A stretch of 64,000 nucleotides of DNA from Lepidodermella squamata (Eukaryota > Animalia > Gastrotricha). This document shows, piece by piece, positions 27,813-63,270 of the stretch; within the stretch, counting starts at the first letter, position 1, and every line of letters begins with the position of its first letter. Below the pieces are notes generated by a model, which was not told the DNA's origin, made no database searches, and worked only from the letters and a program-made list of their open reading frames with translations. A program made the position numbers and the translations under genes. The stretch is taken from positions 186,001 to 250,000 of the forward strand of contig JBLDXI010000026.1 in the NCBI GenBank assembly GCA_047495785.1, written 5' to 3'.

Positions 27813-27895
27813 TCACTGATTTGTAAAATCGATACATGAAATCGATATCGGCTCTATATGATGAAGTATAATTCCTAATGACCGATTAAAGCGAA
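27813..27895. repeat. Dispersed repeat (other copies at 61555-61640 and, inverted, 23064-23094)
   Basis: tcactgatttgtaaaat...gaaatcgatatcggctcta is shared between the copies. Confidence 0.75.
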
Positions 27896-28498: not shown

Positions 28499-30076
28499 TC
28501 AGTTCGGATTGGAAGAGAGCGAAGCTGATTTCTGTTCCAGCAGCTCTGCAACAGCCTCCTTATTTTCACTTCTTGCGTATTCAATAGGCGTGTTCCCGTT
28601 TTCATCAAGAACATTGATTAAATCTGGTTTTCGCTCCAGCAGCGTCTCAATCAAGTCCAGCTTATTTCGATCAACGGCGAGGTGGAGCAGCGAGAGAGAA
28701 TGCATCGTGACTTGGATGGTCAGATCAGCACCTTTTTCGATCAGATAATTAATAGCTTCTGTTGGCGTGTGCCGGCTACCAACTGCACACGCCAGGGGAG
28801 TCCAGTTACAGTCCTCGTTTTTAATATCAAAATCTTGACCACATTCTTCAACAAAAAATTTGAGTAATTCGACATGATTTCCTTCAGCAGCCGAGTGAAT
28901 GGGCATACAACAATTTCCATCTTCCAAATCAATTAATTCCGGCTCCATGCGATGTAGATACCGAACGATTTCAGTGAACCCCCAGTGAGCTGCCCAGTGA
29001 TAGGCAGTTCGGTTGAAATCGCCGTCTTCCGCAAAAAGATCAGCCCCATTTTCAGCTAGAAATTTAACAATTTCAAAATGACCACTCATCGCAGCTAAAT
29101 GAAGCGGAGTTCTCTCGTCCTCGCCTGTGATATTGACGTCACATTTTCCCTCGCCGATCAAGTATTCGACGATGTCTAGCATGCCGCGACACGCAGCCAG
29201 GTGAACTGGCGCGTTTCCGTCGGAATCAGTCATTTGAGCGAGATCAGGGCACTTTTCAGCGCAATATTTGACCAAATCTAGCGATCCTCGAGCACACGCC
29301 AAGTGCATGATAGTTTGATCATCATTTCCAACAGACTCAATCGGAACTTGTTTCTCCTCGATAAAATACCGAACGTACTCAATATCTCCAAGCATTGCAG
29401 ACAAATGAATCGCCATATTATCCTCATTATCCCGAATTTGAATCATCGAAGGAAAGCTCTCACTGAAGTAGGAAATTAGAGAATATTCCGAGGCATTGGC
29501 TGAGCAATGGAGCGCAGATCGACCTTCACGGTTCAAGGCATCGGGTAGCACGTTTTTTTCATCGATTAAATACGTCACAACTTCTAACTGGCCTCCGGTG
29601 GCAGCGCGGTGTAAAGCCGTATTACCAGCATCATCGCTGATCTCGAGCATATCCGGGTAAGATTCAACAAGCAACCTCACAATATCTAAATGGCCACGCT
29701 CGGCCGCAATGTGAATAGCCTGAGAAGAATTTTCGTCACTACTTTCAGCATAAGGATCAGCATTAAGTTCATCGATGAAATATTTGACGATTTCGACATG
29801 TCCATTAGTGACAGCTCGGATGAAGTATGTAAGTCCGCCAGCGTCCAAATGCTCCATTACAAGTGTGTAAGTAATGCTGCCGGGAGAAATGTCAGCCAGC
29901 AATTGACGACAAACGAGCAGATTTCCATTTTCTACAGCCCAGTAAAGCCGAGACAATAAATTAGCAACCTGCAATGGCATAAAGCATGAGAAATAACTTT
30001 GACAAATTAAACTTCTCAAACTTACGGTTTGAATATAATCAGGCAAGCGAATGCATGATTTCTCATCGGGCGGCAT
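28499..30076 (-). CDS. Ankyrin-repeat protein 3 (~13 repeats; probable in-frame 57-nt intron 29969-30025)
   Basis: Canonical ANK repeats (TALHRAATGG, TPLHLAAMSGH, TPIEYA). GTAAG...TGCAG intron after 17 codons. Confidence 0.9.
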   Translation of the reverse strand: MPPDEKSCIRLPDYIQTVSLRSLICQSYFSCFMPLQVANLLSRLYWAVENGNLLVCRQLLADISPGSITYTLVMEHLDAGGLTYFIRAVTNGHVEIVKYFIDELNADPYAESSDENSSQAIHIAAERGHLDIVRLLVESYPDMLEISDDAGNTALHRAATGGQLEVVTYLIDEKNVLPDALNREGRSALHCSANASEYSLISYFSESFPSMIQIRDNEDNMAIHLSAMLGDIEYVRYFIEEKQVPIESVGNDDQTIMHLACARGSLDLVKYCAEKCPDLAQMTDSDGNAPVHLAACRGMLDIVEYLIGEGKCDVNITGEDERTPLHLAAMSGHFEIVKFLAENGADLFAEDGDFNRTAYHWAAHWGFTEIVRYLHRMEPELIDLEDGNCCMPIHSAAEGNHVELLKFFVEECGQDFDIKNEDCNWTPLACAVGSRHTPTEAINYLIEKGADLTIQVTMHSLSLLHLAVDRNKLDLIETLLERKPDLINVLDENGNTPIEYARSENKEAVAELLEQKSASLSSNPN

Positions 30077-44320: not shown

Positions 44321-46676
44321 ATGCTAGCGAAATTTTATTTCATGGCCCTGTTAACCACGGTGTGTGGGACAGAAACATACTCTCAAGTTTCCCCAAGGAA
44401 ACCGCACACCATTTCGATGCTTTCTCTTGTCATGCTGACGGGCTATGAGCCGCGCGACAACCGACTGTGCATGGCATCGCAGCAAATGGTCGTCGACATC
44501 GTAAACACACGGAGAGACATTCTGCCGGACTATCACATAGATCTTGACTTTCAAAACGAAGGCCCAGTCGGCGGACAGTCTGTTCGATTATCAATTGAGT
44601 TCCTACGTCGGTTGGAAAACTCGAACACTATCCATGCGTCGCCTGTAATGTTGGGGCCGTTTCTATCAGCGGCCTGCAAGGCATGGGGCGCGTCGGCTAG
44701 CTACGTCAACTTGGTTATGATTGCTGGGTCTTGTACATCGCCGGCTCAAACTGCTAAGAGAAATTTGTATCCGAACATGTACCGCATCAGATCTCCAGCT
44801 GAACTGCATATCGTTGCAAGGCTGTACTTTCTCAAGAAAATGACAAAGGTACAAAAACTTGCGATTCTCTTCAACAGTGGAAACTCCTACAACTACGAAA
44901 CAGCAATGCTTTTCCAGAAAATTGCCGTTGCAAGTGGCATTCAGGTTCTAGCTTTTGAAGCATACAGCATAGATTCAAATGAAGAGATAGTCGCCTCGTT
45001 GAGGACTAAAGACGTTCGGATAATCGCAATGGAATCAGCTGAATCTGCTGTAGCGAACAGATTCCTCTGCCAAGCTCATAAACTGGGTATGCGAGGTGAC
45101 CGATATCAGTTCGTGTTCCAAATGCTTAGCTATGGAGATCTGCGCAACTTACCATTCGAATTATTCCAGGGCTGTGATCGGACAATGCTGCTTGAACAGT
45201 TCAAGGCATCAGTTTTCATCGGATCGCCTTTGGATATCCTGAAGCCAATGCAAGATCGCACCGCTATCGGCCACACTGTTGCCGAATTCGAGGAGCAATT
45301 CACGAAATACACTAATGGAACAATCACACCTGACTACGATTTTCGTCATCTTTGCTACGACCGCGTCTTAACCGGGATTATGCTTCTGAATGACACTGAG
45401 AAAGCCCTGAACCAGCGTAACATGTCCCTTCGAGATTACAGAACTAACCCGAAAGAAGTTATGCTCATCGCGAATCAAAGTGCGACGCAATTGGAGTTCA
45501 ATAATTTGAGATTTGGGAAGTTCAAGTACTCTAAAAGAGCTGAGTATGATTTCGAACCGCTAGTTTCGCCTAGTTGTTTCCTTCGTTGTTCGCTGTATTG
45601 ATACAGATGCTGTAGGTAACATTAGTTCTTATTCGTTGGAAGAAGTATTGCCCCTACCCAGGTCCTTCCCCGCCGATTCAGCAAAGCTTCTAATCAAACT
45701 AGGCTTTATTCCTGCTGATGTAAGCTGGGCAGTTGTAGGCGTGGCTGTTCTTATTGCTTTGAGTCAAATTGTGCTATGTGGTACAGGTGTATCGGCTAGA
45801 TCGGAGCCGTTGCGAACTTCTGTGACCCTGATTACGGTGTCGCTCATTTTCATCGATGCTGCAGCAATCGCTTTCGCTTCTCAAGGCAGCTCTGCTGTTT
45901 GTTTTGCTCAGATTGCGCTTCTAGCAACCGGAGTTTCCCTGCTCAATGGTTGTCTGACGAGTGTCGTGCTCACGGCATCGAAGGCTTTATCACGTGCAAA
46001 AGGCGTTGCGGGGAGAAGCGGTCATTCCAAGATATCGAATTCCTACACTGCATCTAATTTTGTTATCGCTAAGAAGAGTAGCAATCGTGATGTAAAAACC
46101 CCAAGCGATCCTAACACCTCCGTCAAGGATTGTCTTGTTGTTTTCAACGATAAAGTCACCGCGCTTCACGGAGTAGCGCTAGCAGCTGCATCCATCCTTG
46201 TAGTTGTTATATGGTTCTCTACTGATCCGCCAGTTGAGAAAGTAGAACGTCCCCAGGAATCACTTGCGAGTTATGACAGAAATTCAGACACGTTTCTCGT
46301 TACTCAAAAAATCAGCTGCTACTCAAATTACAATCTGCCGTGGATATTGGCTCTGATAATTGTCAATTCTGTGCTTCTATTGGTCGGCTTATTCAGTGCA
46401 ATATCTCTGAATAATTTCCTAAAACGAGTTAATGGCGGGGATCAACTAAAACTATTCATGATTGCCGAGGTGTTGGCAATCTCGCTATTTCTGTGTACAA
46501 TAGCGATTGTCTTCATTCTTGAATCGAATCCGAACGCGAACGCTCAAAGAATAGCTGCTGCACTCGCTTGCTTGGTATCCTCTTTTTCGATTGGTATAGT
46601 GGTCAACTTCAACAGTTTGAAGACAAAAATTAAAGCTCGCGCCTCGCGAGAGAGCATTCACCTTCGTGAGATCTGA
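44321..46676 (+). CDS. GABA-B-like class C GPCR (Venus-flytrap domain + 7TM), with a frame break near 45563-45615
   Basis: Signal peptide; 'VNTRRDILPDYHI', 'YPNMYRIRSP', 'FLCQAHKLGMRGDRYQF'; 'FPAD' before TM1 with no Cys-rich domain; seven hydrophobic segments including 'VIWFSTDP'. Confidence 0.75.
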
Positions 46677-47129: not shown

Positions 47130-50100
47130 ATGGGTAAGTTTCTACTGACTGCTATGCTTTTTAGCGTGGCTGTTCAGTTCTCAACGGCTTTCCTTCACGA
47201 GTATACGGCTATCGATTACGAAATAATGATGAAAGCTCCAGACAGGGGGTCTGTTTATGGCCCATCTGACAGTATGGCATGGAAAATAACGGCTCAAACG
47301 GCGCCTAATAATTACGCCTGGTAAAAAGCAGTTTGTAATGTATGAATTTGTTGGAATCGTTCCCGTTGTAGCGTAACAGTAACGAATTTTAATCTGGAAG
47401 GATATGATTCACTGTCCATTTTCGATGGACATGACTCGACTTATCCTTTGCTCCGGCGCTGGTCAAAGTCGACTGACAACACGACAAATGAACTTATTTG
47501 CGGCAGTGGGCGCTATTTGTACATCTGGCTGTCATTCGGAGGCAATAGATACATAGCTGCCTATGACGCAATTACTTTCAATTACCAGGCGATTAACGTC
47601 ATAGAGTACCAAAACGATATTGTGTTTCGATACCCTGAATCAGGGTTACTCGTCGCACAAAGCGATGTCAGGTGACCACTCATGTTTCTATTTAGATTTA
47701 CTCTATTTTCTTCATTTAAGGTGGCTTTTCAAACCTCAAGGCGCTGGGAATAGCGAGAAAAAGTGGTTTGTATTAGATTGATCTCTATATCAAGTGTTAC
47801 GTGCATGATTTGCTTATAGCCTGCAGTTTGGTTACATAAAACTTCCCTCGGCTAAGAGTTCAGTTACTCTTTACGATGGTAATGACATCACAGGCAAGCA
47901 GTTATCTCAGGCATTGTGGAATGTGCCAGTTGGAACGCAAGAATACTGCTCAACAGGCCGTTACATGTTCATGCGATTGCTAACTCGTGAAGCAACGAAT
48001 TCGTCTGACTCCTTCTTCACTGCATCATCTTACTCGAGAAACGCCGTGACGGAGCCGCCAACGACAGCAGCGATGACGACAGCTCAATCTAGCAATTCGT
48101 CTACTCTAATTAATGAAGTCCTATCGTCGCATGCTAGTTTGACTTATCCAACCACAACTCCTTTCTACTATCCTAATGAGAACATAGGCTGGCGCTTCGA
48201 CACATACAAATTTAACGCGCTCCCAATCTGGTATGAATAAATCCTCATAAAATATATAAGAATTTGTTTATTTGATCTTAACGAATTTAGTATTGATATC
48301 GATTGGATTTACTTAGCTGCGGGCGATTTCATTACAATCTACGATTCGTATTACATCGACCCTTCGCGGGTGCTCGTTCGCTACAACGAGAGTAGTTACT
48401 GGAGGGGTCAAGGAGATTTCTGTTCCTCGGGCCGATACTTGTTCCTCCACTTCACATCAGACGCCAGATTCGAATATTATGGCTTCAAAATTCAACATTA
48501 CACTCGCGGCTGGGGAGAAGTCACAACGGTGCCACCAGCCACAACAACCACTCTCATGCAAAGCAATGACCCGAATATAACCGAGGTATATGCGAAATCG
48601 GGAGAATCAATCAAGTACCCATCTCACAGCGGAATGTACGGCCCAAACGAAAATCTTGCTTGGCGCTTCGATGCTAAGCGCTTCAACGGTGTTAATACTT
48701 GGTTAGTCATCAATATGAAAATTGAAAATATGATTCATCATAAATTTGTTTCCTTATCCAGCATAACTTTAGTGACAATCAAACTGAGTCCTATCGACAA
48801 TATAACTATTTTTGACGGATACAGCCATCTAAATACGCAAACCATTGTGAGATTCGTTGAAACATATGTTGGATCAGACGTTCGTTGGGAATACTGTTCA
48901 TCTGGCCGCTATTTGTTCCTGCAATTCAAGTCGGATGAAATATATGAGAGCTACGGCTTCAAATTATACGTCTATTACCCGAATAGCGACAGCACAATGC
49001 CCTCAACAACCCCTCGGCCGACCACAGCCATGATGACCACAACTGCAGCTGTTGGGCCCAATGTCACCGATGTTTACGACAGGCCCGGTGTAGCGATCTC
49101 GCACCCTCCTTATGGAGGTTACTATGGGCCTAATGAAAACTTTGCTTGGCGTCTAGACGCAGTTAGGTTCGGCTACTACAGATCTTGGTAAAGAAATCGC
49201 TTTTAAATTACCGCTTCTCAAATTAAAATATGTTTTGTCAAGTGTTATATTTGACAGAATTATGCTCAACTACATTGATAATGTTACGCTGTATGATGGC
49301 TACAACAATGACAACACAAGGGTTATCAGAAAATTTTCCAACGAGCGTGTGGATACGTCTTTCAGATGGAAATATTGCTCGAGCGGCCGATTTATGTTCA
49401 TTCAGTTCGAGTCAGATGCTTATTACCACGACTACGGCTTCAGGCTGTACCCGGACTATGATTACGGATACGACGAGACAACTACACTGCCGACCACTGC
49501 GAAAATAACTACGACACCAGTCGCAACAACAACCCCTCGACCGATTCAAACTCCCTGGCCTCGAGGAGCTGATCTTCTTGGATTTTGGCCGTTGGATGCC
49601 ACATCTCGGTTGAACGACGTCTCCGGTCGCTATCACAACTGTCAGCGTCAATGTGGCGGCTCTCCTAACACAGGCTACTCCGGACCTTTTGGTCAGGATG
49701 CGACTAGCCATACCAGGAGTAAAAGCTCAGATAACATCTTCGACGTAACAGTTCAGCCACAGAATTTCAACAGTCGACGAGCTATGACTGTGAGCATGTT
49801 TGTGAAGGTCCCCACCATCAATTCCGCAACAGGCGGCAACCTCCTCAATCTAACCGACGACTACGGAAAGAGCTACCTGAGCTTAGATTTGAAGGCCATC
49901 TATTCTCCAGCCTGGCACACTCAGCTGGTCATCAGTGGTCAGAACGGGGTGATCGGCACGTATGAAGTCTTCCGTCGTACCGATTGGTCTTTCTTTGCGG
50001 TGGTCATCGAAAACGACCAGTGGTCACCCTGCATGGTCTCCATTCACGGACCGTGGGGTCCCATATACGCTGCCACCTATAAGGCGAAATTCTGCGACAA

Positions 50101-51116
50101 TTTCCACCAAGCCCGGCGGGTTGTTGTCGGTTCGGCTTTGCAGACAGATATCGCATTATCTTGTGTTATGGTTTACGATACCGCTCTTCAGACGAACGAG
50201 GTACGCCAGGCTTATGAGGCTTGCAGAGCTGCTCATGGCACTGCGCCTTGTGGAGCTCCTCATATTCCTTTCCCGCCGATTCCTCAAGCAACTGGCACTG
50301 TGCCGAAAAACGGCCAGTTCCCATGGGTAGTGACGATTAGCAACTATAAGGGTTTCAAATGCGGTGGTGTAATCATCGACCCTTTCTTCATTCTGACTTC
50401 CGGCAACTGTGTTAATGGTGAAAGCACTTCAGGACTGACAATCCGAGTTGGAGACTTCAACACTGCTGTGACAGAAACAAACGAACGAACTCACTCCGCT
50501 TTGGAGTTGGTTACGCATCCGAAGTACAACAGCACGTTAGTTGCTGACATCGCCCTCATCAAGCTTAGCAGTGCGATAAACCTTGAGAATGCCTACGTAA
50601 ATACAGCTTGTCTACCAGATTTTAGCTTGACCGAAGGAAACTTTGCGCAAAACGAGACATATTTCTTTTACGGCTGGGGCGCTAATGGCCGTGTGTCGCT
50701 AGTGGACGTGAAAACGCCGAGATACGCCGCGGGTAGATTGTTCCAGAACGCAAATTGCAAGAATGCTTCCGAAGTGTCTAACAGCGAGATTTTCAACGCT
50801 TGCTTCCAAAGCAGTTTGGAGAAAATGAGGGACGTTCCGTGCGCCGGTGACGAGGGAAGTCCTGTTATGTTCCCATCTTCCGACATACTCGGCAACGACC
50901 TCTTGCAAACTGTGAGCTTGAATTACTTTGAAAGCCGTTAATTGTAAATCCTGTTTTCTATAGGTTGCGATCTTTTCTAGACGTAAAGCCAAGTGTCAAG
51001 CTGAAGATCCGGCTGTTCTCACTATGATTAGTCCTTACGTGAACTGGATTCGTCAAACGATCGGATGTTACATACCTGGGCTGAACAGTCCAGTAGTATG
51101 CCCACAGCCGCATTGA
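47130..51116 (+). CDS. Secreted protein A: signal peptide, 5 CUB-like repeats with Thr-rich linkers, LamG/ConA-like domain, catalytically inactive trypsin-like domain
   Basis: CUB motifs (YxPNEN..W, IYDG, CSSGRYLFLxFxSD...GF). 'LLGFWPLD...MTVSMFVK...WSFFAVV' LamG-like. Trypsin fold 'GQFPW..CGG..LTSGNC..DIALIKL..CAGDEGSP'. Last exon 50964-51116. Confidence 0.85.
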
Positions 51117-52029
51117 TCTTATAAACAATCATGATGGATTCTGCATTGAAGAGTGTTTATAATGCGCCCCGTTAAGTCTGCGACCTTTAGTTAATCGAAC
51201 GCTTGCCGTAGGAATAGACTTATAGCAGATATTTTAAAGCTACCAATGTGCGCAGTTTGCTGCTTCATAGTTCAATACATTATTATTCATCGAAGACCTT
51301 GGAAATAATGTGCAGTAAAAAGTGTACTTACGGGATTCAACGGAATTCAATCTGGATCCCTTGAGCAAAACTTCATGGGGATAAACTATGCACTATTGGC
51401 CTTCCAGCGGTATAAGATATGGCAGAATCGGAGCCTAAATGACTGCGCTGTGAATAAATAAACTCGGCTAAATATTTATGCCCCAAACAAAATTTTCAAC
51501 GAATTCGTTTAATAAGGAAATTTTTGTTATGACTTTTCAAATCATGTTATCCACTCTTGCTATAGCAAACTTCTGTCTTTAACAGCGCAACATAACACAA
51601 CGTGGCACAATCGTTTAGACAGGTAAGCAAGGAAAGTAAGCCAGCTAACCTGCCAGGGACCCAGAATTTTAGTAAAAAAAAGAGGGCTAAAAAATTAGTG
51701 CTTGAAAGGTGCCTTTCCTTTTCACATGATTTTTCGCCTCCGATTAGCCCAGCATAGAATAACTAGTTAGAGAATAACTCTAAGCCAATAAGGATAAAAT
51801 TCGAGCAAAGCCAACAATGGTTTGCGATCAGCGACAACGCAAAAATGACGCCCAAACAAAGGCCGAAAATAATCGCCGAAACTTGTTTTTGATTCCTTCG
51901 ACAGAGTGTTCGAGGCAACCGAGGTATTCGCAATCGGTCGTCCGGAACCGTCAGCAAGGAAACAACTGCTGAAGTATTGACTGAAGCACCAGTCGTCGTA
52001 CTTGAATCGAAGTGAACTAGACTTCATCC

Positions 52030-52299
52030 GATGCCAACAGTCGCATAACTTCGTCGAACGGAATTGGTTTCGTTTGGGAATGATGAGTTTTCATTTGTGA
52101 GGCGAGTGCGTCCAGCTTGGAACAGGCTACCATCTTCCGTCGTTAATAATTCGTATTCTTCATTCTTGAAATATGTTAAATGTATTACTGACTTGGAAAA
52201 ATTCACAATTTCTGTGGTGAGGCGCCATAACTTAACGTATTGTTAATTCCTAATTGCTAAATGTTGAAAGACAAATTGCAAAATAAAACAGTATCAGTA
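52030..52299 (+). mobile_element. CR1/L2-type LINE 3' fragment
   Basis: 'FSFVRRVRPAWNRLPSSVVNNSYSSF' matches the CR1/L2 C-terminal motif FFxxRVxxxWNxLP; it ends in an A-rich tail with short repeats. Confidence 0.6.
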
Positions 52300-53502
52300 T
52301 GAATGCCGCACGGTGGTCAACTCTACTGAAAGTTATAAATTTTATGGAAAATGGTCTTCAACTGAGGGGATGGGTGGTGAAGTGGTGATCATTCTTCGCT
52401 TGCTTTCGCCCTGTTTAAAACCGGAAACGGTAAAGGCGTATAGTCGTGCAGAGGTTAAGTTTCCTATTATTATTGTTATTGTTATTATTTACCCCGGAGA
52501 CCCAGTTCAGATAGCTGTTCCAACTCGCCGCGCGGTAGTTTAACAGGTGATCAGCCGTGTCTCTACCTTTGACAGCCAAATTATCGAGATAACAAGCTAC
52601 ATCCATCCGGTGTATCGGCTGTAATCATTTCCGTGATTTGCTGAAATTAACCCGGCGCTGACAGAAGTGGTGGGTACTTACCGCCAAACTTTGCTGAGAA
52701 ATCGGACCGAGCTTGATCTGATTATCCGCCAAATCGATTTGACTGCACATGTATCATCGCATTTTGTCGGGGTAAAAAAAATGACTGATGATATTCAAAA
52801 AAGAGGAAATAACGGTCGTCTTATCAGTTTCGGCATTAGCTCGAGTATACGTACTTCAAAACGCTCCTTGTAGTCGTCCCAAAGCTCAGCCCAGCTCAGC
52901 CAGTGGATTGAATGCGGCGAAGTAGCGGGACATCTTTGGTTCATTTTCGGCGATTAACTTCTGCATGATTTCGCCTTGTTCTCGATCACTGCTTAATTGC
53001 TAGCGTCTAGAGCCACAAGTTTTTCAAGAAAACTGGGTCAGTTTGTGTCGAGTAAGTTGGTGGGAGTGGGTGGGGTCCGTCATTTGAACTTGGTCAAGAT
53101 AACTACGTCGTAGTAATGCATTGGAGGCGGACCACTGACCTTCAAATGAGAAAGCACAGCTGGCGCCTAACCAGATTAAGCTACGTTCTCCCCCGCGCGC
53201 TTCATTCATATAGTGAAATGAACCTACGCCCAGCCCACTTGGGGACTCCGGGGACTCTGGACAACCCTACGCAGAAACAAACAAACATACCGGGACCGTA
53301 CCACCGCAATCGTCCCGGGCGTCCCTGGAGCTACTTCCATACTGTATTGGTAATATATCTCAGGGAAAATTCCCCTGGAAAAACAGAGTGTACCGGTGCC
53401 TTCTCACGCCAGCGCCGTTATCGGGTTATTCTCTGAGGACTATATAAATGGCCACCTTCCGTATCCATAATTATAATTGCGAATCTATAATATCCTAGTC
53501 AC

Positions 53503-55390
53503 ATGATTGTGATTAATTTCTTACTGACTGCTATGCTTTTTAGCATGGCTGTTCAGTACTCAGCGGCTGTCACTTACGAGTTGAAATCGAATGTCGAAAT
53601 CGCCAAAACAGTGAAGGCTCCCATTAAAGATTCGGTTTATGGCCCATCTCATAGCTTGGATTGGCGAATTGAGGCTGATGTTTCAAAAAATAATTACGCC
53701 TGGTAAGAGGCTTTTCTCTACGGTGTAGAATGACTTTGCAAAAATCATTTCGAATGTAGCATAACCGTGAGCAGTTTGTATCTGGAAGGCAGTGATTCAT
53801 TGTCCATTTTCGATGGATATGACTCAGGCTATCCCTTGCTCCGGCGTTGGGCATTGTCGACTGACAATACGACAAATGAACTTACGTGTGGCAGTGGACG
53901 ATATTTGTACATTTGGATGTCATTTGCCAGCACTAGATACATAGCGGCCAATGACGCAGTTACCTTTATTCACCAAGCGGTTACCGTCAACGAGTACCAA
54001 AATGATACTGTGTTTCGATACCCGGAATCAGGCTTACTCGCGCCACAAAGCGATGTCAGGTGACCACTCGGGCTTCACTTGAAATCTATTTTCTTATTTT
54101 TTTATTTAAGGTGGCTGTTCAGACCTCAAGGCCTTGGGAATGACGAGAAAAAATGGTTAGTTCTACATTTTAATTTCCATCGATGGGTGTTTGATGAGAG
54201 ATTTACTTACAGCCTGTATTTTGGTCACATAAAACTCGCCTCGCCTATGAGTTCAATTTCTCTTTACGATGGCAGCGACATTACACGCAAGCAAATAACG
54301 CAAGGCTTGTGGAATGAGCCATTTGGAACGCAAGAATACTGTTCTACAAGCCGTTACATGACCATGCGATTGCAGACGCGTGAAGCAACGGAATCCTCAG
54401 AATCGCTCTTCTTTACTGCATCATCTTACTCAAGAACACCCGGAATGGAGCCGCCAACTACGACAGCAGCCATGACGACAGCTAAATCCAGCTCAAATTC
54501 GCCTTTGATGGTTATAGAAATGCTATTTCCGGATGATAGATTGAAATATCCTAAACGCGACGGCTATTACGCTCCTAATGAAAACAAAGGCTGGCGCTTC
54601 GACGCCGAAAGATTCAAGGCGTACTCAATTTGGTATGACTATTTCTTACAATGAAACTATAGATTTAAGCCTTAAATTTACGAATTAAGCATCGACTTCG
54701 ATTGGATTTACCTAGCTGCGGGCGACTTCCTTACACTGTACGACTCGTACTCCATCGACCCTACTCGTGTAATCGCTAGCTACAAAGCGAGTAGTTACTG
54801 GACTCAGTACGGTTTCTGTTCCTCGGGCCGATACCTTTTCCTCCACTTCACATCAGACGAGAGATTCGAAAATTATGGCTTCAAAGCTCAATATTACACT
54901 CGTGGCGTGGGGGAACTCACAACGGTGCCACCAACCACTCCGACCCCTTCAACTGCACAGCCGATCACAGCAGCTCAATCTATGCTAATTACCGAAGTCC
55001 CATTTCCGAATGATAGGTTGCTTTATCCCATCTACAGCACCTATTACGCCCCTAACGAAAACGTAGCCTGGCGCTTCGATGCCTATAAATTTAACGCGCT
55101 TTCAACCTGGTATACGAATATATTCCCATAGAATTTTTGTATTTGATTTTAACGAATTTAGCATTGACTTCGAGTGGGTACTCCTAGCCGCGGGTGATTT
55201 CCTTACACTGTACGATTCGTACTCCATCGACCCTTCTCGCGCGCTCGTTACTTACAACTCCTCGAGTTCTATTTGGATTGAAGGCTACCAGTTCTGTTCC
55301 TCAGGCCGTTACATGTTCCTCCACTTCACATCAGACGAGAGATTCGAATATTTTGGCTTCAATTCTAAGCATTACACCCGCGAATATTGA
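53503..55390 (+). CDS. Secreted CUB-only protein B (4 CUB-like repeats), a truncated paralogue of gene A
   Basis: Exon-for-exon homologous to 47130-48510 with the same intron positions; stop codon at 55388-55390. Confidence 0.75.
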
Positions 55391-56799
55391 ATATCATGAT
55401 CATCAATAGTCGAGCTGGATCCTCCATGTTGAAGAGAACTTAGTTTAGAATGAACCCTGTTAAGGTTGTGGCTTACATTTAATCGAACAGCTTGCGGTGG
55501 GAATAAAATTATTGCCGCTGATATGCTATGAGTGTGTGATCAGAGGGGCTTAATTTTCTTAAAGCTGGCAATTTTGGCACAGTACTCGAGTTATGCTTCA
55601 CAGTGGTTCATCGGATCGTGTAGGAAATATAATATGTAAAGGGGCAAAAACTGACCCATCCCATGCGCCGGGCCTGGGGAGAGCAAGTGAAGCCATATAT
55701 ACAAGTGTTTATTAATGCTTTTATTTTTTTTTATATTAATGAATGGGAGTAAACAAAAGTTAGCGTATACAAGCGTATAGCGTATACAAAAAAGTTGGCA
55801 GAAGAAAAAGGAAGAATTGGTTAACAATGTTTACAAAGAAATTTGATGCTTTGCGTGCGAATTAGCATGTGTTTGTTGACTTGAAAGTAATTTAGGTTAA
55901 AGATTTTTCTCGCAATTCGTGGAATTTTGTAACGAAGCTACATCCGTTCGAAAGAGGAATCTCGCCTGTTTTTCAGTGCTATAACCCCACTGCCGTGCGA
56001 TCACTTAACCTAAATTTCTTGGACAAACTCGATGATCATATTAAGGTGATTTTGTGTTAACGATGCAGGCAACGGTCTCAAGTTACGACTCGTAATCTAC
56101 TACTTCAACTCGTAAGACTCTATTTTATACACCGTGGATTAAATGAGTTGAGGATTTCCCTGTATCTTGGAGACCAATTTCCATCAAGTTACGTTCAATA
56201 ATAAAATATTCGCGGAAAATAGCGATACATTATGAAAATAATTGATCATAGGTGGATAGCAAATCCTAATAACTTTCGCCAACTATTCAAACGTTTACCG
56301 CATTCAGTTGTTCTCTTGGATCTCATTACTAGTAAAGCCTGTGATCTTCGAAGAGATTTGTAGCGATTGTGATGCTGAAGTTCATGTCTTGCTCGTTGAT
56401 ATTGCCCGCTAAAATTTCGAAGTTGTAAAATTAAATGGCAGATGAGGATTTTTGCATGCATTCAATTTTACTCCGTTTCGACATTTCTTATCGAAAAACT
56501 CTAAAGAATCGAGCATTAGCGCAACGTGGTTCCAGCACAGCTGTTTTCTTTTCTAGTTGTAGTCACGTTGGCGCCAATTTCAAACATGACATTTTCACTC
56601 GTAGCACTGGTTACGTGAACTAAATAAGTAACTAAAGCTCTGATAATATTTTTTAGTGATTATTACCTTATACTCGGCATTTTTATCTACAACTGAGTTG
56701 CCTTTTATCAAACCAGCTGCTAATTAACGCAGCCAATTCTAACCTCGAGTTGATGTTCGCAATACGTTACTATATAATAAAGGAATAATCGATTAATTA

Positions 56800-59049
56800 A
56801 TGAATAAGCGTCGAAGAGCTAATGTGAGCACTTTGGCCTGGATTCTACAGTTAATTAGCCTGCGTCTGATATCATGTAGGTTAAAAAAGAAATTTAGTTA
56901 CCTTCTCGATTGTTCGACCCCATATTTTAGGTTCGCCTCTGTCTAGCGACCATAAATTGTGGCTGGACGAAGAGTGCCACCATAATACGACGTTTGACGT
57001 GACTGGAAGCCATGGAGCTATTCACTGCATGGATCTCACAGATGCTCAGAGCTGGCGGCTGAATGTTGCAGGCAACAAAACTATTCGGTAGCAACCTTCC
57101 CTCGAATTTCATCGATTTATAAATCAATATCGTTATAGATTCACTCTAGTCGAATTCTTCGCAGTACCCTGCGGCTCTTGTTCAGCAAAAAACACCGCTT
57201 GCGATTTGATTTCAATTTACGACGGCGCAAGTGTCAACCCGAAAGACCCGGCCTCTTTTCAGTCGCCTCTGCTACGAACATGCACCGCCCCGTCCAAGGA
57301 TGGCATTGGCGTAACTACGCTGTCAAACATGGCTTTCATCCGGTACCAACCTGGAACCGGCTCATTTCCAGAGTCTACGAACCATACTCGCAGTTTCTAC
57401 CTCAAATTTGAAGGTTAATTCTTCGATTTTATTAATTATTAAATATATATCTCTTATTTTATAGACATTGAGACTTCTGACGAATCTTCCAATGTCGTCA
57501 GCCAACGCCGTAGTAGTGATGCGAAAAGTATCGCTATAGCTGTTGCGATCGGAACCGGCGTTTTAGTTGTCCTAGGCCTCGCCCTCGGATTTTATTGCCA
57601 TTATTGCCGGAATAATCGGTTCAAAAACCGGCGGAAAAAGCCTCGAACGGTCGCAAGTACGGGCGATGAGCTCGAAGGCCTCAACACCGCCATCCCGCCG
57701 GCTTCAGCGCAAAAAGAGCAGATGATCATCCCAGCGCCTCGGAGGGCGTCACGGTCACACTCGACTGAAAACGGCCAATCAGTTCGTAAATTTTCGCTGA
57801 AATCGCAATCTGAAATCGCGTCGACAACTCGGAAATTATCGACACGCTCCAATGATCACCACGAAAATCACCAGCGACAACAGGATGAAGTGCTGTCCGC
57901 ATTAGCTCAGGATTCGTTTGACGGCATGGCGCCTAAGATCAGTGTGGCAAGTTCAACCGGCACGGCCGAGAATAGCATAATTATTAACGACGTTGTTTTC
58001 GATTTGCCGTTCAATCATGCGGAAATTCTACCTCAACAATTGCGTTACTCGAGCGAGCCGATCGGGATTGGGTCATTTGGAGTCGTGTACCAGGCGATCT
58101 ACATTCCGGCAAGGTCAGAAACGCCAGATGATGACCGGCCACCTCAGCGTAGAAAGGTTTTCATCCTTCTTTTAAAAAAAATCAAAAATATTTTTTCCTG
58201 GGCTTATTTAGGTTGCAGTTAAGAAAATGCGAATGTTGAACGAGGGTTATCGGCAGGCTTTAGAGGCCGAGCTGAAACTGCTGACCTATATTGGCCCTCA
58301 CACTTATATCGTCGATTTAGTCGGTGCCATAACTCAACCGGATGAAGAATTCAGCATTGTTGTCGATTATTGCGAACTCGGCTCGCTTCAACAATTTCTA
58401 GCCAATTTCGAACAAGTTGACCCATCGAACAGCATTTCAGCCCGACGGCCGCCTACAATAAATTCCGGCGATTTGCTGCTTTTTGCCGAGCAAATCGCTA
58501 ATGGGATGAGCTATGTCCACTTTCGAAAATGTGTTCATCGCGATTTAGCGGCCAGAAATATTCTGATAAATGCAAATTACGTGCCAAAAATTACCGATTT
58601 CGGCGTGGCTCGAACGCTGAACTCCCAGGCATTTTTCAACGTAAGGAAAATTCAATTTAAAAAATCGAAACAAATCCACCTTAAAATGTATTATTATTGA
58701 ATATTTTTTCTTAATTTAGACAAAAAATGAAGGCGATTTTCCGTGGAAATGGTGCGCCCTCGAGGTGTTGGAGGGTGAATTTTTCGAGCCGAAATCCGAC
58801 ATCTGGTCATTTGGCGTCCTACTCTGGGAAATGTTCGCGCTAAGCCGGAAGCCTTATTCCGACGTGACTCGCTGCACGAATGAGTTTATCGAAAGCTTGA
58901 AGAATGACATGCGCCTGCCGAAGCCGAGCAGTTCGACGCCGAAAACCGTCTACACATTGATGTATCAATGCTGGCGACGAATCCCAGACGATCGTCCGAT
59001 TTTCCCAGAATTGGAGCGAGCTTTGTTGAGTCTTCGCACTTCTTACTGA
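56800..59049 (+). CDS. Receptor tyrosine kinase with a single extracellular CUB-like domain
   Basis: Spliced model: signal-like exon 56800-56875; CUB-like exons 56931-57087 and 57139-57413 ('DLISIYDG'); TM 'IAIAVAIGTGVLVVLGLALGFY' followed by a basic stretch. Kinase motifs GIGSFG, VAVK, HRDLAARN, DFG, PWKW and SDIWSFG. Confidence 0.85.
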
Positions 59050-59556
59050 TTTAATATCAGCTGTTTACCTCTTTCTTCGTTTTTTCGTGTTATTTCTCGG
59101 CGATTTCAGACAAAAAAATTAATTTGTTTTTTATGACCTGATAAGAAGCTGTCGAGGAAAATAAAAAAAATAGGTTTAATCTGTATATTATTTTCTAATT
59201 TGACTTCTGTCGCGCCGGAAACCACGTGAATATCGAACCATGTCGGTGATGTTTCCAGAATAATATTTCGCATAACTCGAGTTCACACATAAAAGCGGTG
59301 TGTTTGATTTGCGATAACGCGCCGTAATTATGGGCATTAAATCGGGTGCATTTACCGCCTTAATTACGCCGTTATCTCCACACGTTTTTATTAGCCTAGC
59401 TGGCAATAAATAAGGGCGTGGATGGCAAATGGGCTGATAAAAAGCAATATGCTACTCTCAAGGCGACATCTTGAAATTGAAACATATGCTGTTTTTCTTC
59501 CCCCCATATATATATATCCGATTTAAAATTCCGCTAAATTTTTAGGGGTATATATT

Positions 59557-62500
59557 ATGAATTACCTATCGCTGCTGAAAGCTTTCGGCCTCTTGGCAGG
59601 TAAGGATCCTAATGAAAAATTGATGTCTCTTGAACTGTGCAATTTCAGCTATTGGCTGCGCTAATGGCTGTTTCATCGTTAAGATGGACGATGATGGCCG
59701 GGGTGGAACCATCCAACCTGTCCTAGATTCTGATGGCAACTACCTACCCAACCAGAATTGCTACTACACCATCTCGTTGCCTCTGGGAAGCCCATCTGAA
59801 CCTCTTGGCTTGAAGTATGACTCAAAACCGAAGTCAAACCTAAATTAATTACTTAATTAAACAGCTTGTGGTTCACATACATGGATCTTGAGATTGACGA
59901 CTCGTGGAGGCCGTGCAAAGCGTGAGTATATAATATCAGGAATTTTTATTAGTAATTATCATCAAATTTCAGTGAGAGCTATTCATGCGATGACGAGTGC
60001 AAGAAGACCGATCACGTCGTCATCACTGATATTGCCCTCAAGAAGGAGGTCACCCGCCGTTGCGGACGAAATATCCCGAACTACACCTACAAAACCGTGT
60101 CTTCTGCCGAAATTCTGTTCAAGACTGATCGCGTTTTCCAACGCACTGGTTTCACCCTCAACTTCCGAAGTGAGTTCCGCATCTTCATAATTCGACCTTG
60201 AAACTTGTTTTTTTCAGTTGATCCTGAGAGCGAACCCTGCCAACGCGTTACCATTGTCAGCTCTAAGGACGGTAAGGGTACCATCAGCTCGGCTACCAAA
60301 TGGAACGGCAACTACCGCCCGAACGAAAACTGCCGCTGGAAGGTGTCTGTTCCAAGCAGCTTCGAAAAAATCAAGATCACATTCACCAAGATGGAAGTCG
60401 ACGGTTCATGCTCTGCCGATTCGCCGACCTGCAACTGCCCGAAGGATTCCGTCACGATTTTCGGCGGTGATACCGAAGAAGGTATCAAATTTTAGCGAAA
60501 AAAAGATGATTTCCCCACGATTTTGTCTGTTTTCAGGCCCCCTTGTCACCACTCGTTGCGGATTCTCGATTCCGAACATGCGTTTCTTCACTGAATCCGG
60601 GCAAACTAACATGTTTGTCCAGTTCAAAACCGACGCCACGATCGAATACGGCGGTTTCACCCTGCAGTACGAGGGTTGCAACGAGCCTTGCGAAATCACC
60701 ACCCCAGCACCGATCCCGACTACGACCACGCCCGAAACTGTCCACCCCTACCCGCGTGATGACGCCCTCCTTGGTTTCTGGCCGATGGGTCAAAACAAGG
60801 GCCTTCGCGACGTCAGCGCCAACAAGCGCCACTGCGACCAGGCCTGCAAGGGCACGATCGATACCGCCGGAGTTTCCGGTCCATTCGGCGACCCGTCGAC
60901 CAGCCACCACGCCCCGGGCATGAACGAACCAGTCTTCTCCGTCTCGCACATTCTCGAGCCCCGCAGCTCCTACACCGTGTCGATGTGGGTCAACGTCCCG
61001 ACCAACGCTAAGGGCGGTCTTTTCTCGCTGATTTCCAACGACCAAGATCTTGCCGTAGACATTGAAACCGGCGCTGTTTCAGGCCGTCCGGTTTTGAAGG
61101 TTCGCGGCGGTGTTGACACGGCGAGTGACGTCTACGGGCCGTACGAAGCCATCCAGCCTAACACCTGGACGTACCTTGCGGTTCGCTTCGACGCTGTCTT
61201 GTGCACGCTGTCCATCTTTGGCCAGTTTGGTGAGCTCTACATGCCTAGCTACAAGTTGCGCTTGTGCAGCAACAAGAACGCCCTGTACTCACGAACTTTG
61301 TGGGTTGGAGCTACGAAGACCGGTGAGGAATCGTGGAGCTATTTGGACAGGTAACAGCTCATCTAATTATATATAAAAAAATATAAATATTTACAAAACG
61401 AAAATGGAATTCCCAGCTCTGAATTTAGGCGCTTTAGCCCTAAATTCTTTTGATTTTTCCGAATCCATTAAGGTACCCCTTTCGAAACCTGGATTTTATT
61501 AACACCTGGTAGCCTGAGACGCTATATGCTTATAACACAGCTGATATCGAAAAATCACTGATTTGTAAAATTGATAATTGAAATCGATATCGGCTCTACG
61601 GGCTGAGGTTTAGTTCGTCAAATGACCGCCGATTAGAGCAAAATACTCGCGATCTATTGGTTAGACTTGGCAATACAGCGTCTCATAAGCAGGGCGAAAA
61701 ATTCACGGAAAAAGGTTCAGAATTCCGAAATGAGCGGTTTTTGACTCGCCATAATATCTCATGTATCAATATTATGGCCAGAAAATTATTCCGAAAATTA
61801 CCGAACCAGTTACCATCGAAGTTTTCAATTTTTTCTTCGGTATCATTTAAATTTTTCGAAGAAACCTCGGATAAAAGATTGGAGATTCTCCCGAAATATT
61901 TTATTTGAAAAAAATTGTCGAATTTCTCAAAAAGTTTTAAAAATTAAAAAAACTGTGAGGAAATTACGGGACACGCAGTAAATAAATGGAAAAAATTGTA
62001 ATGAGGTCATGAAATTTGGATTACCTCAATTGATTCTGGAAAATCTAGTGTGAGCGCCTCAAATTTGGTTTTTTGTGAAATTTCAAGCGCCAAAATCTCA
62101 AAACCTTCAATTTCCGAGTTATTTAGAGGAATACAGATGTAATAATGAAACAAGATTCGAAGTAAATAATCATCGGAAAGACCGTTCCATACATAACCGG
62201 GTGTTTCTCGGGTTTTTTCGGTAAAATTTAGCTTTGCATGATAAAAGACAGACAAAAACCGACTGATGAGAAAAACCTCAATGGCTTGTTTTCATTTTTT
62301 CTGCCTAGTTCCGTCTCGGTTTCTTGCGTTATGTTGTACTCCGATGCGCTCCCAATTGAGACAATCCTACAAAACGCCGATACCTGCCGTATCCCGCACG
62401 GTTCTGCGGCCTGCGGCGCCCCGAAGATCCCGCTGCCGTCCATTCCGCAGACCTCCACCACCGTGCCAATGTACGGCCAGTTCCCATGGATGGCGTCGAT

Positions 62501-63270
62501 CCGCCTCAATGGCAAGCACATCTGCGGCGCCGCTGTTCTCGGCCGCTACTACCTTCTCTCGGCCGCCAGCTGCTTCAAGGATTCTCAAAACGTCGCCGAA
62601 TACGAGGTCCGCGTTGGCGAACACAGCTTGAGCCTGAAAGAGCAGTACGAAGTAATTCATGAGGTCAAACAATTCCAAATCCACCCAGAGTACAATGTTG
62701 TCGGCAACGATTTGGCTGTTGTCGAACTCTCCACGCCCATCGACTTCACCAACTTCTACGTCAACTCGATCTGCCTGCCCACCGATGAGGAGGCGAAGAA
62801 GCGCAGCGGCGACTTCTTCTTCTTCGGGTAAGGTTGCGGAAATTTCCGGAAAAATTAAGTAAAATTATTTAAATAGATGGGGCAAGAACGGCCGTACTGG
62901 TTCGACCAACGTTAACAACCCGCGTTACGTCTATGGTGCGATCACCCCGAACCAGGCTTGCTCCGACGCCTGGGGCAGCGAACAAGATCCGCAGCTCAGC
63001 GCCTGCTTCGAGGCCACGAACAACAAGAACGTTCCTTGCACCTTGGACGAGGGCGGTATCCTAATGGCCCCTGGCGACTTGACCACCGGCCCTGACGCCC
63101 GTTTGTACCCGGTTGGTATCTACAGCCGCCGCTACAGCAACGATTGCGAACACAAGGCCCCGGCTCTGTTCACGTGGCTGGAGGGTTACCTGTACGGAAT
63201 CCAGGAGAGAATTGCTTGCAACATCCCTGGCCACTTCTACCCGGAGAATTGCCCGATCAATTACTCCTAA
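59557..63270 (+). CDS. Secreted protein C: signal peptide, 2 CUB domains, LamG-like domain, catalytically inactive trypsin-like domain
   Basis: 'NYLPNQNCYY' and 'NYRPNENCRW...FKTDATIEYGGF'; 'LLGFWPM...YTVSMWV'; trypsin fold 'GQFPW..CGA..LSAASC..NDLAVV..CTLDEGG'. One ~960-nt intron (61350-62308). Confidence 0.85.

What the first reader, a model, noticed from the sequence alone, without database searches (positions are those of the whole stretch)
47130..63270. Four-gene CUB cluster: two secreted pseudoproteases, a CUB-only derivative and a CUB receptor tyrosine kinase, a possible ligand/decoy/receptor module
Seen: four co-oriented CUB-domain genes within 16 kb. Gene A is 5xCUB-LamG-like-inactive trypsin, gene B is 4xCUB secreted, the RTK is CUB-TM-kinase, and gene C is 2xCUB-LamG-like-inactive trypsin. 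Known: inactive trypsin-fold proteins can act as RTK ligands (HGF-MET, MSP-RON) or as immune-cascade cofactors in arthropods, and CUB domains mediate protein-protein contacts. Inference: the locus may encode a lineage-specific extracellular signalling or recognition system. Clustering could equally reflect local exon shuffling.
Basis: partly seen in the sequence, partly recalled or inferred. Interest (0 to 1): 0.75.

Follow-up and report, generated by a model that had tools for sequence, protein, structure and literature searches.

The report
Conserved pseudoprotease–receptor kinase gene trio
Two secreted, catalytically dead protease-like genes flank a small cell-surface tyrosine-kinase receptor gene in this invertebrate (probably a gastrotrich), and the same three genes lie in the same order in a second, distant organism, so this orphan receptor has candidate partners that can be tested, although no binding has been shown.

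Summary
Four intact, co-oriented genes with GT-AG introns of about 50 bp lie at 47130-63270.

- **A** (1201 aa): signal peptide, 5 degenerate CUBs, a LamG/ConA-like domain and a dead trypsin fold (H57N, S195E).
- **B** (537 aa): signal peptide and 4 CUBs.
- **RTK** (648 aa): signal-like N-terminus, one divergent CUB, a transmembrane helix and an FGFR/PDGFR-like tyrosine kinase.
- **C** (798 aa): signal peptide, 2 canonical CUBs, a LamG-like domain and a dead trypsin fold (H57S, S195E).

New here: overlapping ENA metagenome contigs from another organism carry 7xCUB-LamG-pseudoprotease, then the RTK orthologue (40% identity, ectodomain included), then 2xCUB-LamG-pseudoprotease. All three are co-oriented, and the flanking genes are not shared. 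So the linkage A-RTK-C is old. B is absent there. It is a young copy of the 5' part of A, with dN/dS 0.44.

Close paralogues of A elsewhere in this genome have no such kinase beside them. The LamG-pseudoprotease family has no named relative in the databases searched.

Binding, co-expression and transcripts could not be tested. I put about 0.4 on a functional cassette in which secreted partners act on the neighbouring RTK. Regulatory or purely historical linkage remains a serious rival. This is a new variant of known kinds, of moderate to high interest. Earlier scan notes report other unusual RTKs in this genome, but not this trio.

The parts
47130..51116 (+). Gene A, 1201 aa, 8 exons: 47130-47320, 47372-47671, 47721-47765, 47820-48230, 48291-48701, 48762-49187, 49243-50911, 50964-51116. 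Signal peptide, 5 degenerate CUB units joined by Thr/Pro-rich linkers, a LamG/ConA-like jelly roll, and a trypsin-fold pseudoprotease (H57N, D102 kept, S195E, no R-IVGG activation site).
   Evidence: Model. Pfam Trypsin 2.5e-24 and CUB 3.5e-4. Local CUB profile. AF2 model and ConA-like matches at Z 17-19. Trypsin-fold Foldseek hits.
53503..55390 (+). Gene B, 537 aa, 6 exons: 53503-53702, 53760-54059, 54111-54155, 54213-54632, 54690-55109, 55162-55390. Signal peptide and 4 A-type CUBs. It is a copy of A's CUB1-3 plus an internal duplicate of CUB3, with a stop directly after the 4th CUB.
   Evidence: Model. No splice donor at the stop. DNA similarity to A runs from 36 nt upstream of the ATG into CUB3 (75.7%). 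68% aa identity, dN/dS 0.44, dS 0.48.
56800..59049 (+). Receptor tyrosine kinase, 648 aa, 6 exons: 56800-56879, 56947-57087, 57139-57413, 57465-58156, 58212-58640, 58720-59049. Signal-like N-terminus, one divergent CUB (about aa 36-165), a transmembrane helix (SIAIAVAIGTGVLVVLGLALGFYC), a juxtamembrane stretch of about 190 aa and a tyrosine kinase domain. The kinase motifs GxGxFG, VAVK, HRDLAARN, DFG and PWKW are intact. The activation loop has no tyrosine.
   Evidence: Sequence and model. Pfam. PDB best matches VEGFR/CSF1R/KIT/FLT3/PDGFR/FGFR. Best named database hits are FGFR1/2. CUB fold via the orthologue. The first exon and intron position are shared with the orthologue.
59557..63270 (+). 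Gene C, 798 aa, 7 exons: 59557-59599, 59649-59814, 59973-60169, 60218-60481, 60537-61350, 62309-62827, 62877-63270. Signal peptide, 2 canonical CUBs, a LamG-like domain and a trypsin-fold pseudoprotease (H57S, D102 kept, S195E, G193L). The 958-bp intron at 61351-62308 is swollen by interspersed repeats.
   Evidence: Model. Pfam CUB, Laminin_G_3 (3.3e-5, under the cut-off) and Trypsin. Repeats in the intron.
59050..59556 (+). RTK-to-C spacer of 507 bp. AATAAA lies about 110 nt after the RTK stop. An acceptor-like TTTTTAG lies 14 nt before the ATG of C.
   Evidence: Read directly from the sequence. No transcript data.
44321..46676 (+). Flanking class-C-GPCR-like gene (ANF_receptor and 7tm_3). 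At least two more ANF_receptor genes follow gene C, just beyond the window. This is context, not part of the conserved trio.
   Evidence: The ANF_receptor gene next to the trio in the other organism has its best matches on other contigs.

Best explanation
A, the RTK and C form an old, conserved three-gene cassette of extracellular signalling proteins.

A and C are secreted, single-chain, non-catalytic binding proteins: CUB arrays on mucin-like linkers, a LamG/ConA-like domain and a dead trypsin fold that carries the family-wide GDEG motif. The RTK is a minimal receptor with one CUB, a transmembrane helix and an FGFR/PDGFR-like kinase.

The most likely working model is that A and/or C act on the neighbouring RTK as ligand or soluble co-receptor. 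Their CUB or LamG-pseudoprotease surfaces would bind its single CUB, or a shared third molecule, and so promote receptor dimerisation. B is a recent truncated copy of A's N-terminal CUBs. If A binds through those CUBs, B would compete with it.

Shown: the gene models, the domains, the loss of catalytic residues, the orthology of A and of the RTK in a second organism with conserved order and orientation, and the young age and intactness of B.

Inferred: secretion, any physical contact, and the direction of signalling.
For: (1) The order A-like, RTK, C-like, all co-oriented, recurs in three overlapping ENA metagenome contigs of one other organism (GC 37-38%). Identities are 33-36% for A, 40% for the RTK over aa 20-646 and 34% for C over aa 3-747.

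(2) Orthology. A and its counterpart form a clade with 99/98 support. A, C and their counterparts form a CUB-bearing subfamily with 95/98 support. Best hits are reciprocal.

(3) The flanks are not shared. The three 149-aa genes upstream in the other organism have no match in this genome. Its ANF_receptor gene has its best matches on other contigs. No other flank similarity was found apart from ankyrin repeats.

(4) The RTK is a singleton. The nearest kinase in the genome is 38% identical, and its ectodomain has no paralogue. Yet ectodomain, transmembrane helix (VAIGTGVLVV...GFYC) and kinase are all conserved in the orthologue.

(5) All 13 family members aligned over the active site have lost H57 and S195, and most carry Glu at 195. 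The orthologues do too. This points to a constrained non-enzymatic surface.

(6) B has kept six exons and five splice sites intact at dS 0.48, with dN/dS 0.44.

(7) From established knowledge: trypsin-fold pseudoproteases (HGF-MET, MSP-RON), LamG proteins (GAS6-AXL) and CUB proteins (PDGF-C/D, neuropilin, SCUBE) all serve as RTK ligands or co-receptors.
Against: - There are no expression, binding or co-evolution data.
- Only one other organism shows the trio, and its distance from this one cannot be calibrated.
- Ligand and receptor genes are rarely linked in animals.
- The paralogues of A at C55:43315-47291, C26:~87 kb and C19:~58 kb have no RTK, B or C copy in the stretches fetched around them.
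- A and C lack the activation cleavage that HGF and MSP need.
- The RTK's CUB is supported only by a low-confidence model (pLDDT 55.6) and weak profile scores.
- The A/B CUBs are degenerate, which could mean relaxed function.
- B is absent from the other organism, so it is not part of any conserved module.
Confidence: 0.4

Rival explanations
1. The genes are linked but do not bind each other. The three genes stay together because they share regulatory elements or a transcription unit: a co-expression domain, or an operon in an animal said to use spliced-leader trans-splicing. A and C act as matrix, adhesive or recognition proteins independently of the RTK.
For: All genes are co-oriented and the spacers are short: 507 bp from the RTK to C here and about 0.9-1.4 kb in the other organism. 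An acceptor-like site lies just before the ATG of C. Earlier notes of the scan report a spliced-leader-like RNA gene in this genome (untested here). The A paralogues function without an adjacent RTK. Most of the roughly 15-20 LamG-pseudoprotease genes have no kinase nearby.
Against: The spacers are longer than in classical operons. The RTK has its own AATAAA signal. No transcript data exist either way. Regulatory linkage does not exclude binding.
Confidence: 0.3
2. The linkage is a historical accident. A and C are old tandem paralogues, an unrelated RTK gene happens to lie between them, and the arrangement has simply not yet been broken in the two lineages sampled.
For: CUB and tyrosine-kinase genes are each very numerous in this genome (at least 157 and at least 144 matches), so a chance adjacency can arise. 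Only two organisms are available. The proteins may evolve fast, which would make the organisms look more distant than they are.
Against: Both flanks differ between the two organisms while the three genes keep their order and orientation. Branch lengths between the orthologues are about 1.7-2.1 substitutions per site. The kinase exons are only 52-55% identical.
Confidence: 0.25
3. B is a decaying pseudogene rather than a secreted CUB-only protein.
For: B is a truncated copy that begins only 36 nt upstream of the ATG, so a promoter may not have been copied. dN/dS of 0.44 is relaxed. Two or three of its CUB units score at background against the CUB profile. It is absent in the other organism.
Against: The 537-codon frame is open, all five GT-AG introns and the junction cysteines are kept at dS 0.48, and dN/dS is below 1.
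Confidence: 0.25

Closest known systems
HGF-MET and MSP-RON (plasminogen-related growth factors and their RTKs)
   Same: A secreted protein whose C-terminal trypsin-fold domain has lost its catalytic residues acts as an RTK ligand.
   Different: HGF and MSP have PAN and kringle domains and must be cleaved at an R-V activation site. A and C have CUB and LamG-like domains, no kringles and no activation site (…PIPQATGTVPKNGQFPW…). MET and RON have Sema-PSI-IPT ectodomains, whereas this RTK has a single CUB. Its kinase matches VEGFR, PDGFR and FGFR best, not MET. The HGF and MET genes are not neighbours.
GAS6 / protein S with the TAM receptors (AXL, MER, TYRO3)
   Same: Secreted ligands that engage an RTK through LamG domains.
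   Different: Their layout is Gla-EGF-LamG-LamG, with no trypsin fold and no CUB. The LamG-like domain here belongs to the Laminin_G_3 / ConA-like type and matches Pfam only weakly.
CUB-bearing partners of class III/V RTKs: PDGF-C/D, neuropilins, SCUBE1-3
   Same: CUB domains on secreted or co-receptor proteins that modulate PDGFR, VEGFR or FLT3. Those kinases are the closest solved relatives of this RTK's kinase exon. SCUBE1-FLT3 is described in PMC10153537, and the SCUBE family in PMC10214685.
   Different: In those systems the RTK itself carries Ig domains, not a CUB, and none of the partners has a LamG-pseudoprotease module.
Complement and coagulation-type CUB serine proteases (C1r, C1s, MASPs, enteropeptidase)
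   Same: CUB domains N-terminal to a chymotrypsin-fold domain. Inactive enteropeptidase was the top Foldseek match (7wqx).
   Different: Those are active zymogens with EGF, CCP, LDLa or SRCR modules and an activation site. They have no LamG domain.
Arthropod serine protease homologues (masquerade, scarface, clip-domain SPHs)
   Same: Secreted S1A-fold proteins without catalytic serine that are used as binding or cofactor proteins.
   Different: They carry a clip domain, are usually S195G and are cleaved for function. They have no CUB or LamG and no linked RTK.
Other unusual RTKs of the same genome
   Same: I confirmed a 3xCUB-kinase gene at C2:~1985-1988.5 kb. Earlier notes report RTKs whose ectodomain is LamG-SEA-LamG-dead trypsin. 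If that is real, it is a 'Rosetta stone' fusion of the same two parts that are separate neighbours here.
   Different: The kinases are only 30-44% identical to this one. I did not verify the fusion family. None of the LamG-pseudoprotease genes closest to A lies next to a kinase hit.

Membership tests
S1A chymotrypsin-fold family (Pfam Trypsin, PF00089) | Sequence and fold of the two-barrel trypsin domain | tested here: met
   A 2.5e-24, C 5.4e-22; 14 of 15 family rows match; Foldseek probability 1.0 to plasmin, elastase, thrombin and others.
Active serine protease | Catalytic triad His57-Asp102-Ser195 and a freed Ile16 N-terminus after cleavage | tested here: not met
   A has H57N and S195E; C has H57S, S195E and G193L. 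No R-IVGG site. All 13 aligned paralogues that cover the active site, and both orthologues, have lost H57 and S195. These are pseudoproteases.
CUB domain (PF00431): genes C, A and B | Profile match to the ~110-aa CUB jelly roll with its conserved C3-C4 disulfide | tested here: met
   C: 1.3e-8 and 1.9e-4 per exon; 74.8 and 33.1 bits on the local profile. A and B: Pfam borderline (21.3 bits against 21.4); local profile 4-26 bits against a shuffle maximum of 10.4, with three units at background. The repeat pattern, the junction cysteine and the seven robust CUBs (27-63 bits; the seventh is split by an intron) in the orthologue of A support the assignment.
CUB domain: RTK ectodomain | Profile match or fold match to CUB | tested here: inconclusive
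   No Pfam hit for the exons or for the intron-free orthologue ectodomain. Local profile gives 11.9 bits here and 16 bits for the orthologue. The AF2 model of the orthologue ectodomain is weak (pLDDT 55.6), but its top 15 Foldseek hits, and nearly all of those listed, are CUB domains with TM 0.55-0.66. A CUB is likely, not proven.
LamG / ConA-like lectin superfamily (Laminin_G_3, PF13385) | Profile match, or a 13-14-strand jelly roll | tested here: met
   C scores 24.5 bits, under the 27.6 cut-off. A has no hit itself. 8 of 15 family rows match, best 1.8e-10. Residues 1-235 of the gene A model have pLDDT 70-88 and match ConA-like jelly rolls at Z 17-19 over about 200 residues, and pentraxin at Z 13-14. 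Met at superfamily level only.
Receptor tyrosine kinase | Signal peptide, single transmembrane helix and a tyrosine-kinase catalytic domain with HRDLAARN, DFG, the VAVK lysine and PxxW(M/C)APE | tested here: met
   The signal-like first exon is shared with the orthologue. It is weakly hydrophobic, and no dedicated predictor was available.
Receptor tyrosine kinase | Activation-loop tyrosine(s) for trans-autophosphorylation | tested here: not met
   The loop reads DFGVARTLNSQAFFNTKNEGDFPWKW here and DFGIARTINLENFFMGNNDSEHPWKW in the orthologue. Neither has a Tyr, and the FF is conserved. Regulation must differ from classical RTKs.
HGF/MSP-type growth factor | PAN and kringle domains; activation cleavage; MET/RON-type receptor | tested here: not met
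   No kringle or PAN in Pfam. No cleavage motif. The receptor is not MET-like. The analogy is one of function, not of family membership.
Ligand-receptor gene cassette | Physical interaction and co-expression of the neighbours | not testable with these tools
   No transcriptome, multimer prediction or experiment was available. Only conserved linkage was tested, and that test was positive.

The most novel reading that the evidence does not exclude
A and/or C are the cognate ligands (or obligate soluble co-receptors) of the neighbouring single-CUB RTK. This would be a pseudoprotease-to-RTK signalling system that arose independently of HGF-MET and is kept as a linked gene cassette in gastrotrich-like animals. 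B would be a newly evolved natural antagonist. The dead-protease-ectodomain RTKs reported elsewhere in this genome would be fused descendants of the same partnership.
Probability: 0.3. Interest if true: 0.8.

Novelty: new variant of a known kind. Interest (0 to 1): 0.58.

Why it matters
Orphan receptor tyrosine kinases are hard to match with ligands, and genomic linkage almost never helps in animals. Here an orphan RTK with a minimal ectodomain is flanked by two secreted pseudoproteases in two divergent organisms. That gives named candidates which can be tested directly.

If the link is real, it would be a second, independent case of a dead trypsin fold being recruited to RTK signalling, the first being HGF-MET. 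It would also be an example of how lineage-specific signalling systems are put together from CUB, LamG and S1A parts.

The work also documents a sizeable LamG-pseudoprotease family with an invariant Ser195-to-Glu/Gln change. That family has no annotated relative in the public databases searched.

Tried and rejected
- **B as the 5' end of the RTK gene:** rejected. B ends in TGA with no splice donor. The RTK has its own ATG and signal-like exon, shared with the orthologue.
- **Recent exon shuffling of CUBs between the four genes:** rejected. The RTK ectodomain has no paralogue, and A/B-type CUBs occur only in A, B and the C55 copy of A.
- **The same cluster repeated inside the genome:** not found. 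The stretches fetched around the C55, C26:87 kb and C19 copies of A hold no RTK, B or C copy.
- **Word-based protein search with A's LamG-pseudoprotease exon:** only two weak hits, both to the trypsin part.
- **ESM Atlas:** no usable hit.
- **Two scans of JGI metagenome contigs** (C-type and RTK-type patterns): no relative found.
- **Pfam on the RTK ectodomain,** both here and in the intron-free orthologue: nothing. PDB sequence search: nothing.
- **Literature searches** for CUB-RTK or CUB-LamG-pseudoprotease architectures: nothing relevant.
- **Verifying the LamG-dead-trypsin RTK fusion family from earlier notes:** the C31 locus I fetched showed a kinase but no clear LamG-pseudoprotease upstream, so this stays untested.
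- **The ANF_receptor gene as a fourth syntenic member:** rejected. The family has at least 55 copies, and the best matches lie on other contigs.
- **Joined (spliced) protein models:** these were assembled only inside local scripts. They were not sent to any remote search or fold tool. Remote searches used single exons, or the intron-free orthologue, by reference.


Full report
**What the sequence holds**

The window is eukaryotic, about 43% GC, with very short introns. I read the + strand from 46.9 to 63.4 kb frame by frame and tested every frame-preserving GT-AG join between neighbouring open segments. This gives four uninterrupted coding models:

| Gene | Length | Exons |
|---|---|---|
| A | 1201 aa | 8 |
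| B | 537 aa | 6 |
| RTK | 648 aa | 6 |
| C | 798 aa | 7 |

Most introns are 48-79 bp. Gene C also has one of 158 bp and one of 958 bp, the latter filled with interspersed repeats.

The spliced proteins were assembled only inside local scripts. Remote tools were given single exons, or intron-free orthologues, by reference. The joined models were never searched or folded remotely.

**Domains**

Pfam on single exons gives the following:
- Trypsin: A 2.5e-24, C 5.4e-22.
- PK_Tyr_Ser-Thr: 4.4e-29 and 2.1e-21.
- CUB in C: 1.3e-8 and 1.9e-4.
- CUB in A: borderline, 21.3 bits against a cut-off of 21.4.
- Laminin_G_3 in C: sub-threshold, 3.3e-5.

Each CUB in A and B is split by a phase-2 intron at a TG|GT site, and splicing creates the third CUB cysteine. 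That cysteine would pair with the Cys of the recurring CSSGRY motif.

I built a profile from 20 canonical CUBs of the same genome. It scores the spliced units from 74.8 bits (C CUB2) down to 4.4 bits. Nine of the 12 units lie above the best of 2400 shuffles (10.4 bits), and the RTK ectodomain scores 11.9 bits.

The LamG-like region is supported in three ways:
- Laminin_G_3 hits in 8 of 15 aligned family members, best 1.8e-10.
- An AlphaFold model of gene A's main exon, whose first 235 residues have pLDDT 70-88.
- Matches of that part to ConA-like jelly rolls at Z 17-19 over about 200 residues.

The rest of the model matches trypsin-fold proteases.

Both protease domains are dead. A reads LTSGNC / DIAL / GDEGSP, and C reads LSAASC / NDLAV / LDEGGI. 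Neither has an R-IVGG activation site.

The kinase keeps GxGxFG, the VAVK lysine, HRDLAARN, DFG and PWKW. Its best solved relatives are VEGFR, CSF1R, KIT, FLT3, PDGFR and FGFR, and its best named database hits are FGFR1/2 at about 30% identity. Its activation loop has no tyrosine.

**Family context inside the genome**

The assembly has 121.2 Mb in 151 contigs. That size, the contig number and the 43% GC fit the published Lepidodermella squamata assembly (122 Mb, 157 contigs, 43% GC; PMC11660948). I did not test the identity by sequence.

- CUB (at least 157 matches) and tyrosine-kinase domains (at least 144) are abundant.
- The LamG-pseudoprotease module has some 15-20 paralogues. In all 13 that cover the active site, H57 and S195 are lost, and position 195 is Glu, Gln or Met.
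- A has close copies at C55 (full length, 90% identity in the main exon), at C26:87 kb (70%) and at C19:58 kb (59%, with two in-frame stops). The stretches I fetched around them hold no RTK, B or C copy.
- A/B-type CUBs exist only in A, B and the C55 copy.
- The RTK is a singleton. The next kinase is 38% identical, and its ectodomain exon has no other match.
- Another gene, at C2:~1985-1988.5 kb, combines three canonical CUBs with a kinase. CUB-RTKs therefore recur in this animal.

**Gene B**

B is 68% identical to A's first 402 residues. The DNA similarity starts 36 nt before the ATG and ends inside CUB3. B's fourth CUB is an internal copy of its third. A stop follows directly, with no splice donor.

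With dS 0.48 and dN/dS 0.44, and with all splice sites intact, it looks like a retained, fast-evolving gene rather than a wreck. Expression is unknown.

**Relatives elsewhere**

The word-based search with A's main exon found only two weak trypsin-part hits, and the ESM Atlas gave nothing.

A profile of the family run against 1.84 billion representatives found full-length LamG-pseudoprotease relatives only among unnamed ENA metagenome proteins. One of them, P0009, matches gene C end to end (34% identity, C aa 3-747). Another, P0010, matches A's C-terminal half (36.5%).

Their contigs (L056, L057 and L058, which are more than 99% identical where they overlap; GC 37-38%) assemble into about 21 kb that carries, all on one strand:
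1. Three small 149-aa genes.
2. A 7xCUB-LamG-pseudoprotease gene.
3. After about 0.9 kb, a 595-aa RTK that is 40% identical to ours over aa 20-646. The match includes the ectodomain, the transmembrane helix (VAIGTGVLVV…GFYC) and the tyrosine-free activation loop.
4. Two small ORFs.
5. The 2xCUB-LamG-pseudoprotease gene.

There is no B.

A maximum-likelihood tree places A with its counterpart (99/98 support). It also unites A, C and both counterparts as one subfamily (95/98).

The flanks are not shared:
- The 149-aa genes have no match in this genome.
- The neighbouring ANF_receptor gene has its best matches on other contigs, in a family of at least 55 copies.
- Nothing else matches except ankyrin repeats.

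Two scans of JGI metagenome contigs found no further relatives.

**The RTK ectodomain**

In the other organism the ectodomain is not interrupted by an intron, so it could be handled by reference. Pfam finds nothing.

An AlphaFold model built on a three-row alignment is weak (pLDDT 55.6, pTM 0.53). Its top 15 Foldseek matches, and nearly all of those listed, are CUB domains (spermadhesin, TSG-6, PCPE-1, Neto2, MASP-1, neuropilin, C1r), with TM-scores of 0.55-0.66. I take the CUB assignment as likely.

The signal-like first exon and the position of its intron are shared between the two organisms.

**Interpretation**

This makes a functional tie plausible. In the favoured model, secreted non-catalytic partners act on a minimal single-CUB RTK, by analogy with HGF-MET, GAS6-AXL and the CUB-bearing partners of PDGFR, VEGFR and FLT3.

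It is not proof:
- Only two organisms are known.
- Their distance cannot be calibrated.
- Shared regulation or simple inertia would give the same picture.
- Other members of the family live without a kinase neighbour.
- The 'decoy' B is a recent, lineage-specific addition.

I give the binding-cassette model about 0.4, regulatory linkage without binding about 0.3, and historical accident about 0.25.

**Novelty**

All the parts are known domain types. I did not find CUB-LamG-pseudoprotease proteins, a single-CUB RTK or their conserved linkage in the papers searched or under any database name. I class this as a new variant of known kinds.

Earlier notes of this scan describe RTKs with a dead-protease ectodomain elsewhere in this genome. 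If they are real, they would be a fusion of the two parts that are neighbours here. I could not verify them.

Noticed in passing
window 44321-46676 (+); also C26:250337-252814 and 254344-256773, just beyond the window's end: The cluster sits inside a run of co-oriented class-C-GPCR-like genes (ANF_receptor plus 7tm_3). The family has at least 55 copies in the genome, many with in-frame stops.
   Followed up: partly
window 52086-52300 (in the A-B spacer): A ~215-bp element has copies that are 95-99% identical on more than ten contigs. It looks like a recently active small non-autonomous transposon. Older ~140-bp repeats lie at about 51345-51490.
   Followed up: partly
window 61351-62308 (long intron of gene C): Two interspersed repeat families (~115 bp and ~200 bp, 73-90% identical to many genomic copies) account for this one oversized intron in a gene whose other introns are mostly about 50 bp.
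   Followed up: partly
window 58596-58760 (RTK activation loop); L056:~3690-3760: The activation loop has no tyrosine in either organism, and a Phe-Phe pair sits where RTKs usually carry Tyr-Tyr. All catalytic motifs are intact. This suggests a non-canonical mode of activation.
   Followed up: partly
alignment A1 (paralogues on C7, C55, C19, C54, C1, C29, C11, C57): The whole LamG-pseudoprotease family keeps a strongly conserved VPC-x-GDEGSP motif (Ser195 to Glu, or Gln in one clade) and a GQFPW motif in place of the IVGG N-terminus. The former active-site region looks constrained rather than decayed.
   Followed up: partly
G000:C55:43315-47291: A full-length second copy of gene A (90% identical in the LamG-pseudoprotease exon, 59-90% in the CUB exons) lies on another contig. 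The 23 kb fetched downstream of it hold no B, RTK or C. An unrelated kinase hit lies 23 kb upstream, at C55:20018-20809.
   Followed up: partly
G000:C2:~1985171-1988460 (minus strand; L063): A separate gene combines three canonical CUB domains with a tyrosine kinase. CUB-ectodomain RTKs therefore arose more than once, or diversified, in this genome.
   Followed up: partly
L056:4391-4630 and 4943-5188 (the other organism, between the RTK and the C-like gene): Two small ORFs with signal peptides; the first has a Ly6-like start (…IDCYECGG…). They have no counterpart in the 507-bp spacer here.
   Followed up: no
window 7138-7824 and 8488-9186 (+); 11415-13649 (+); 21325-30076 (-): Two tandem GNAT acetyltransferase genes, an AMP deaminase gene (exon match 3.7e-97) and three ankyrin-repeat genes. 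These look like ordinary neighbours.
   Followed up: no
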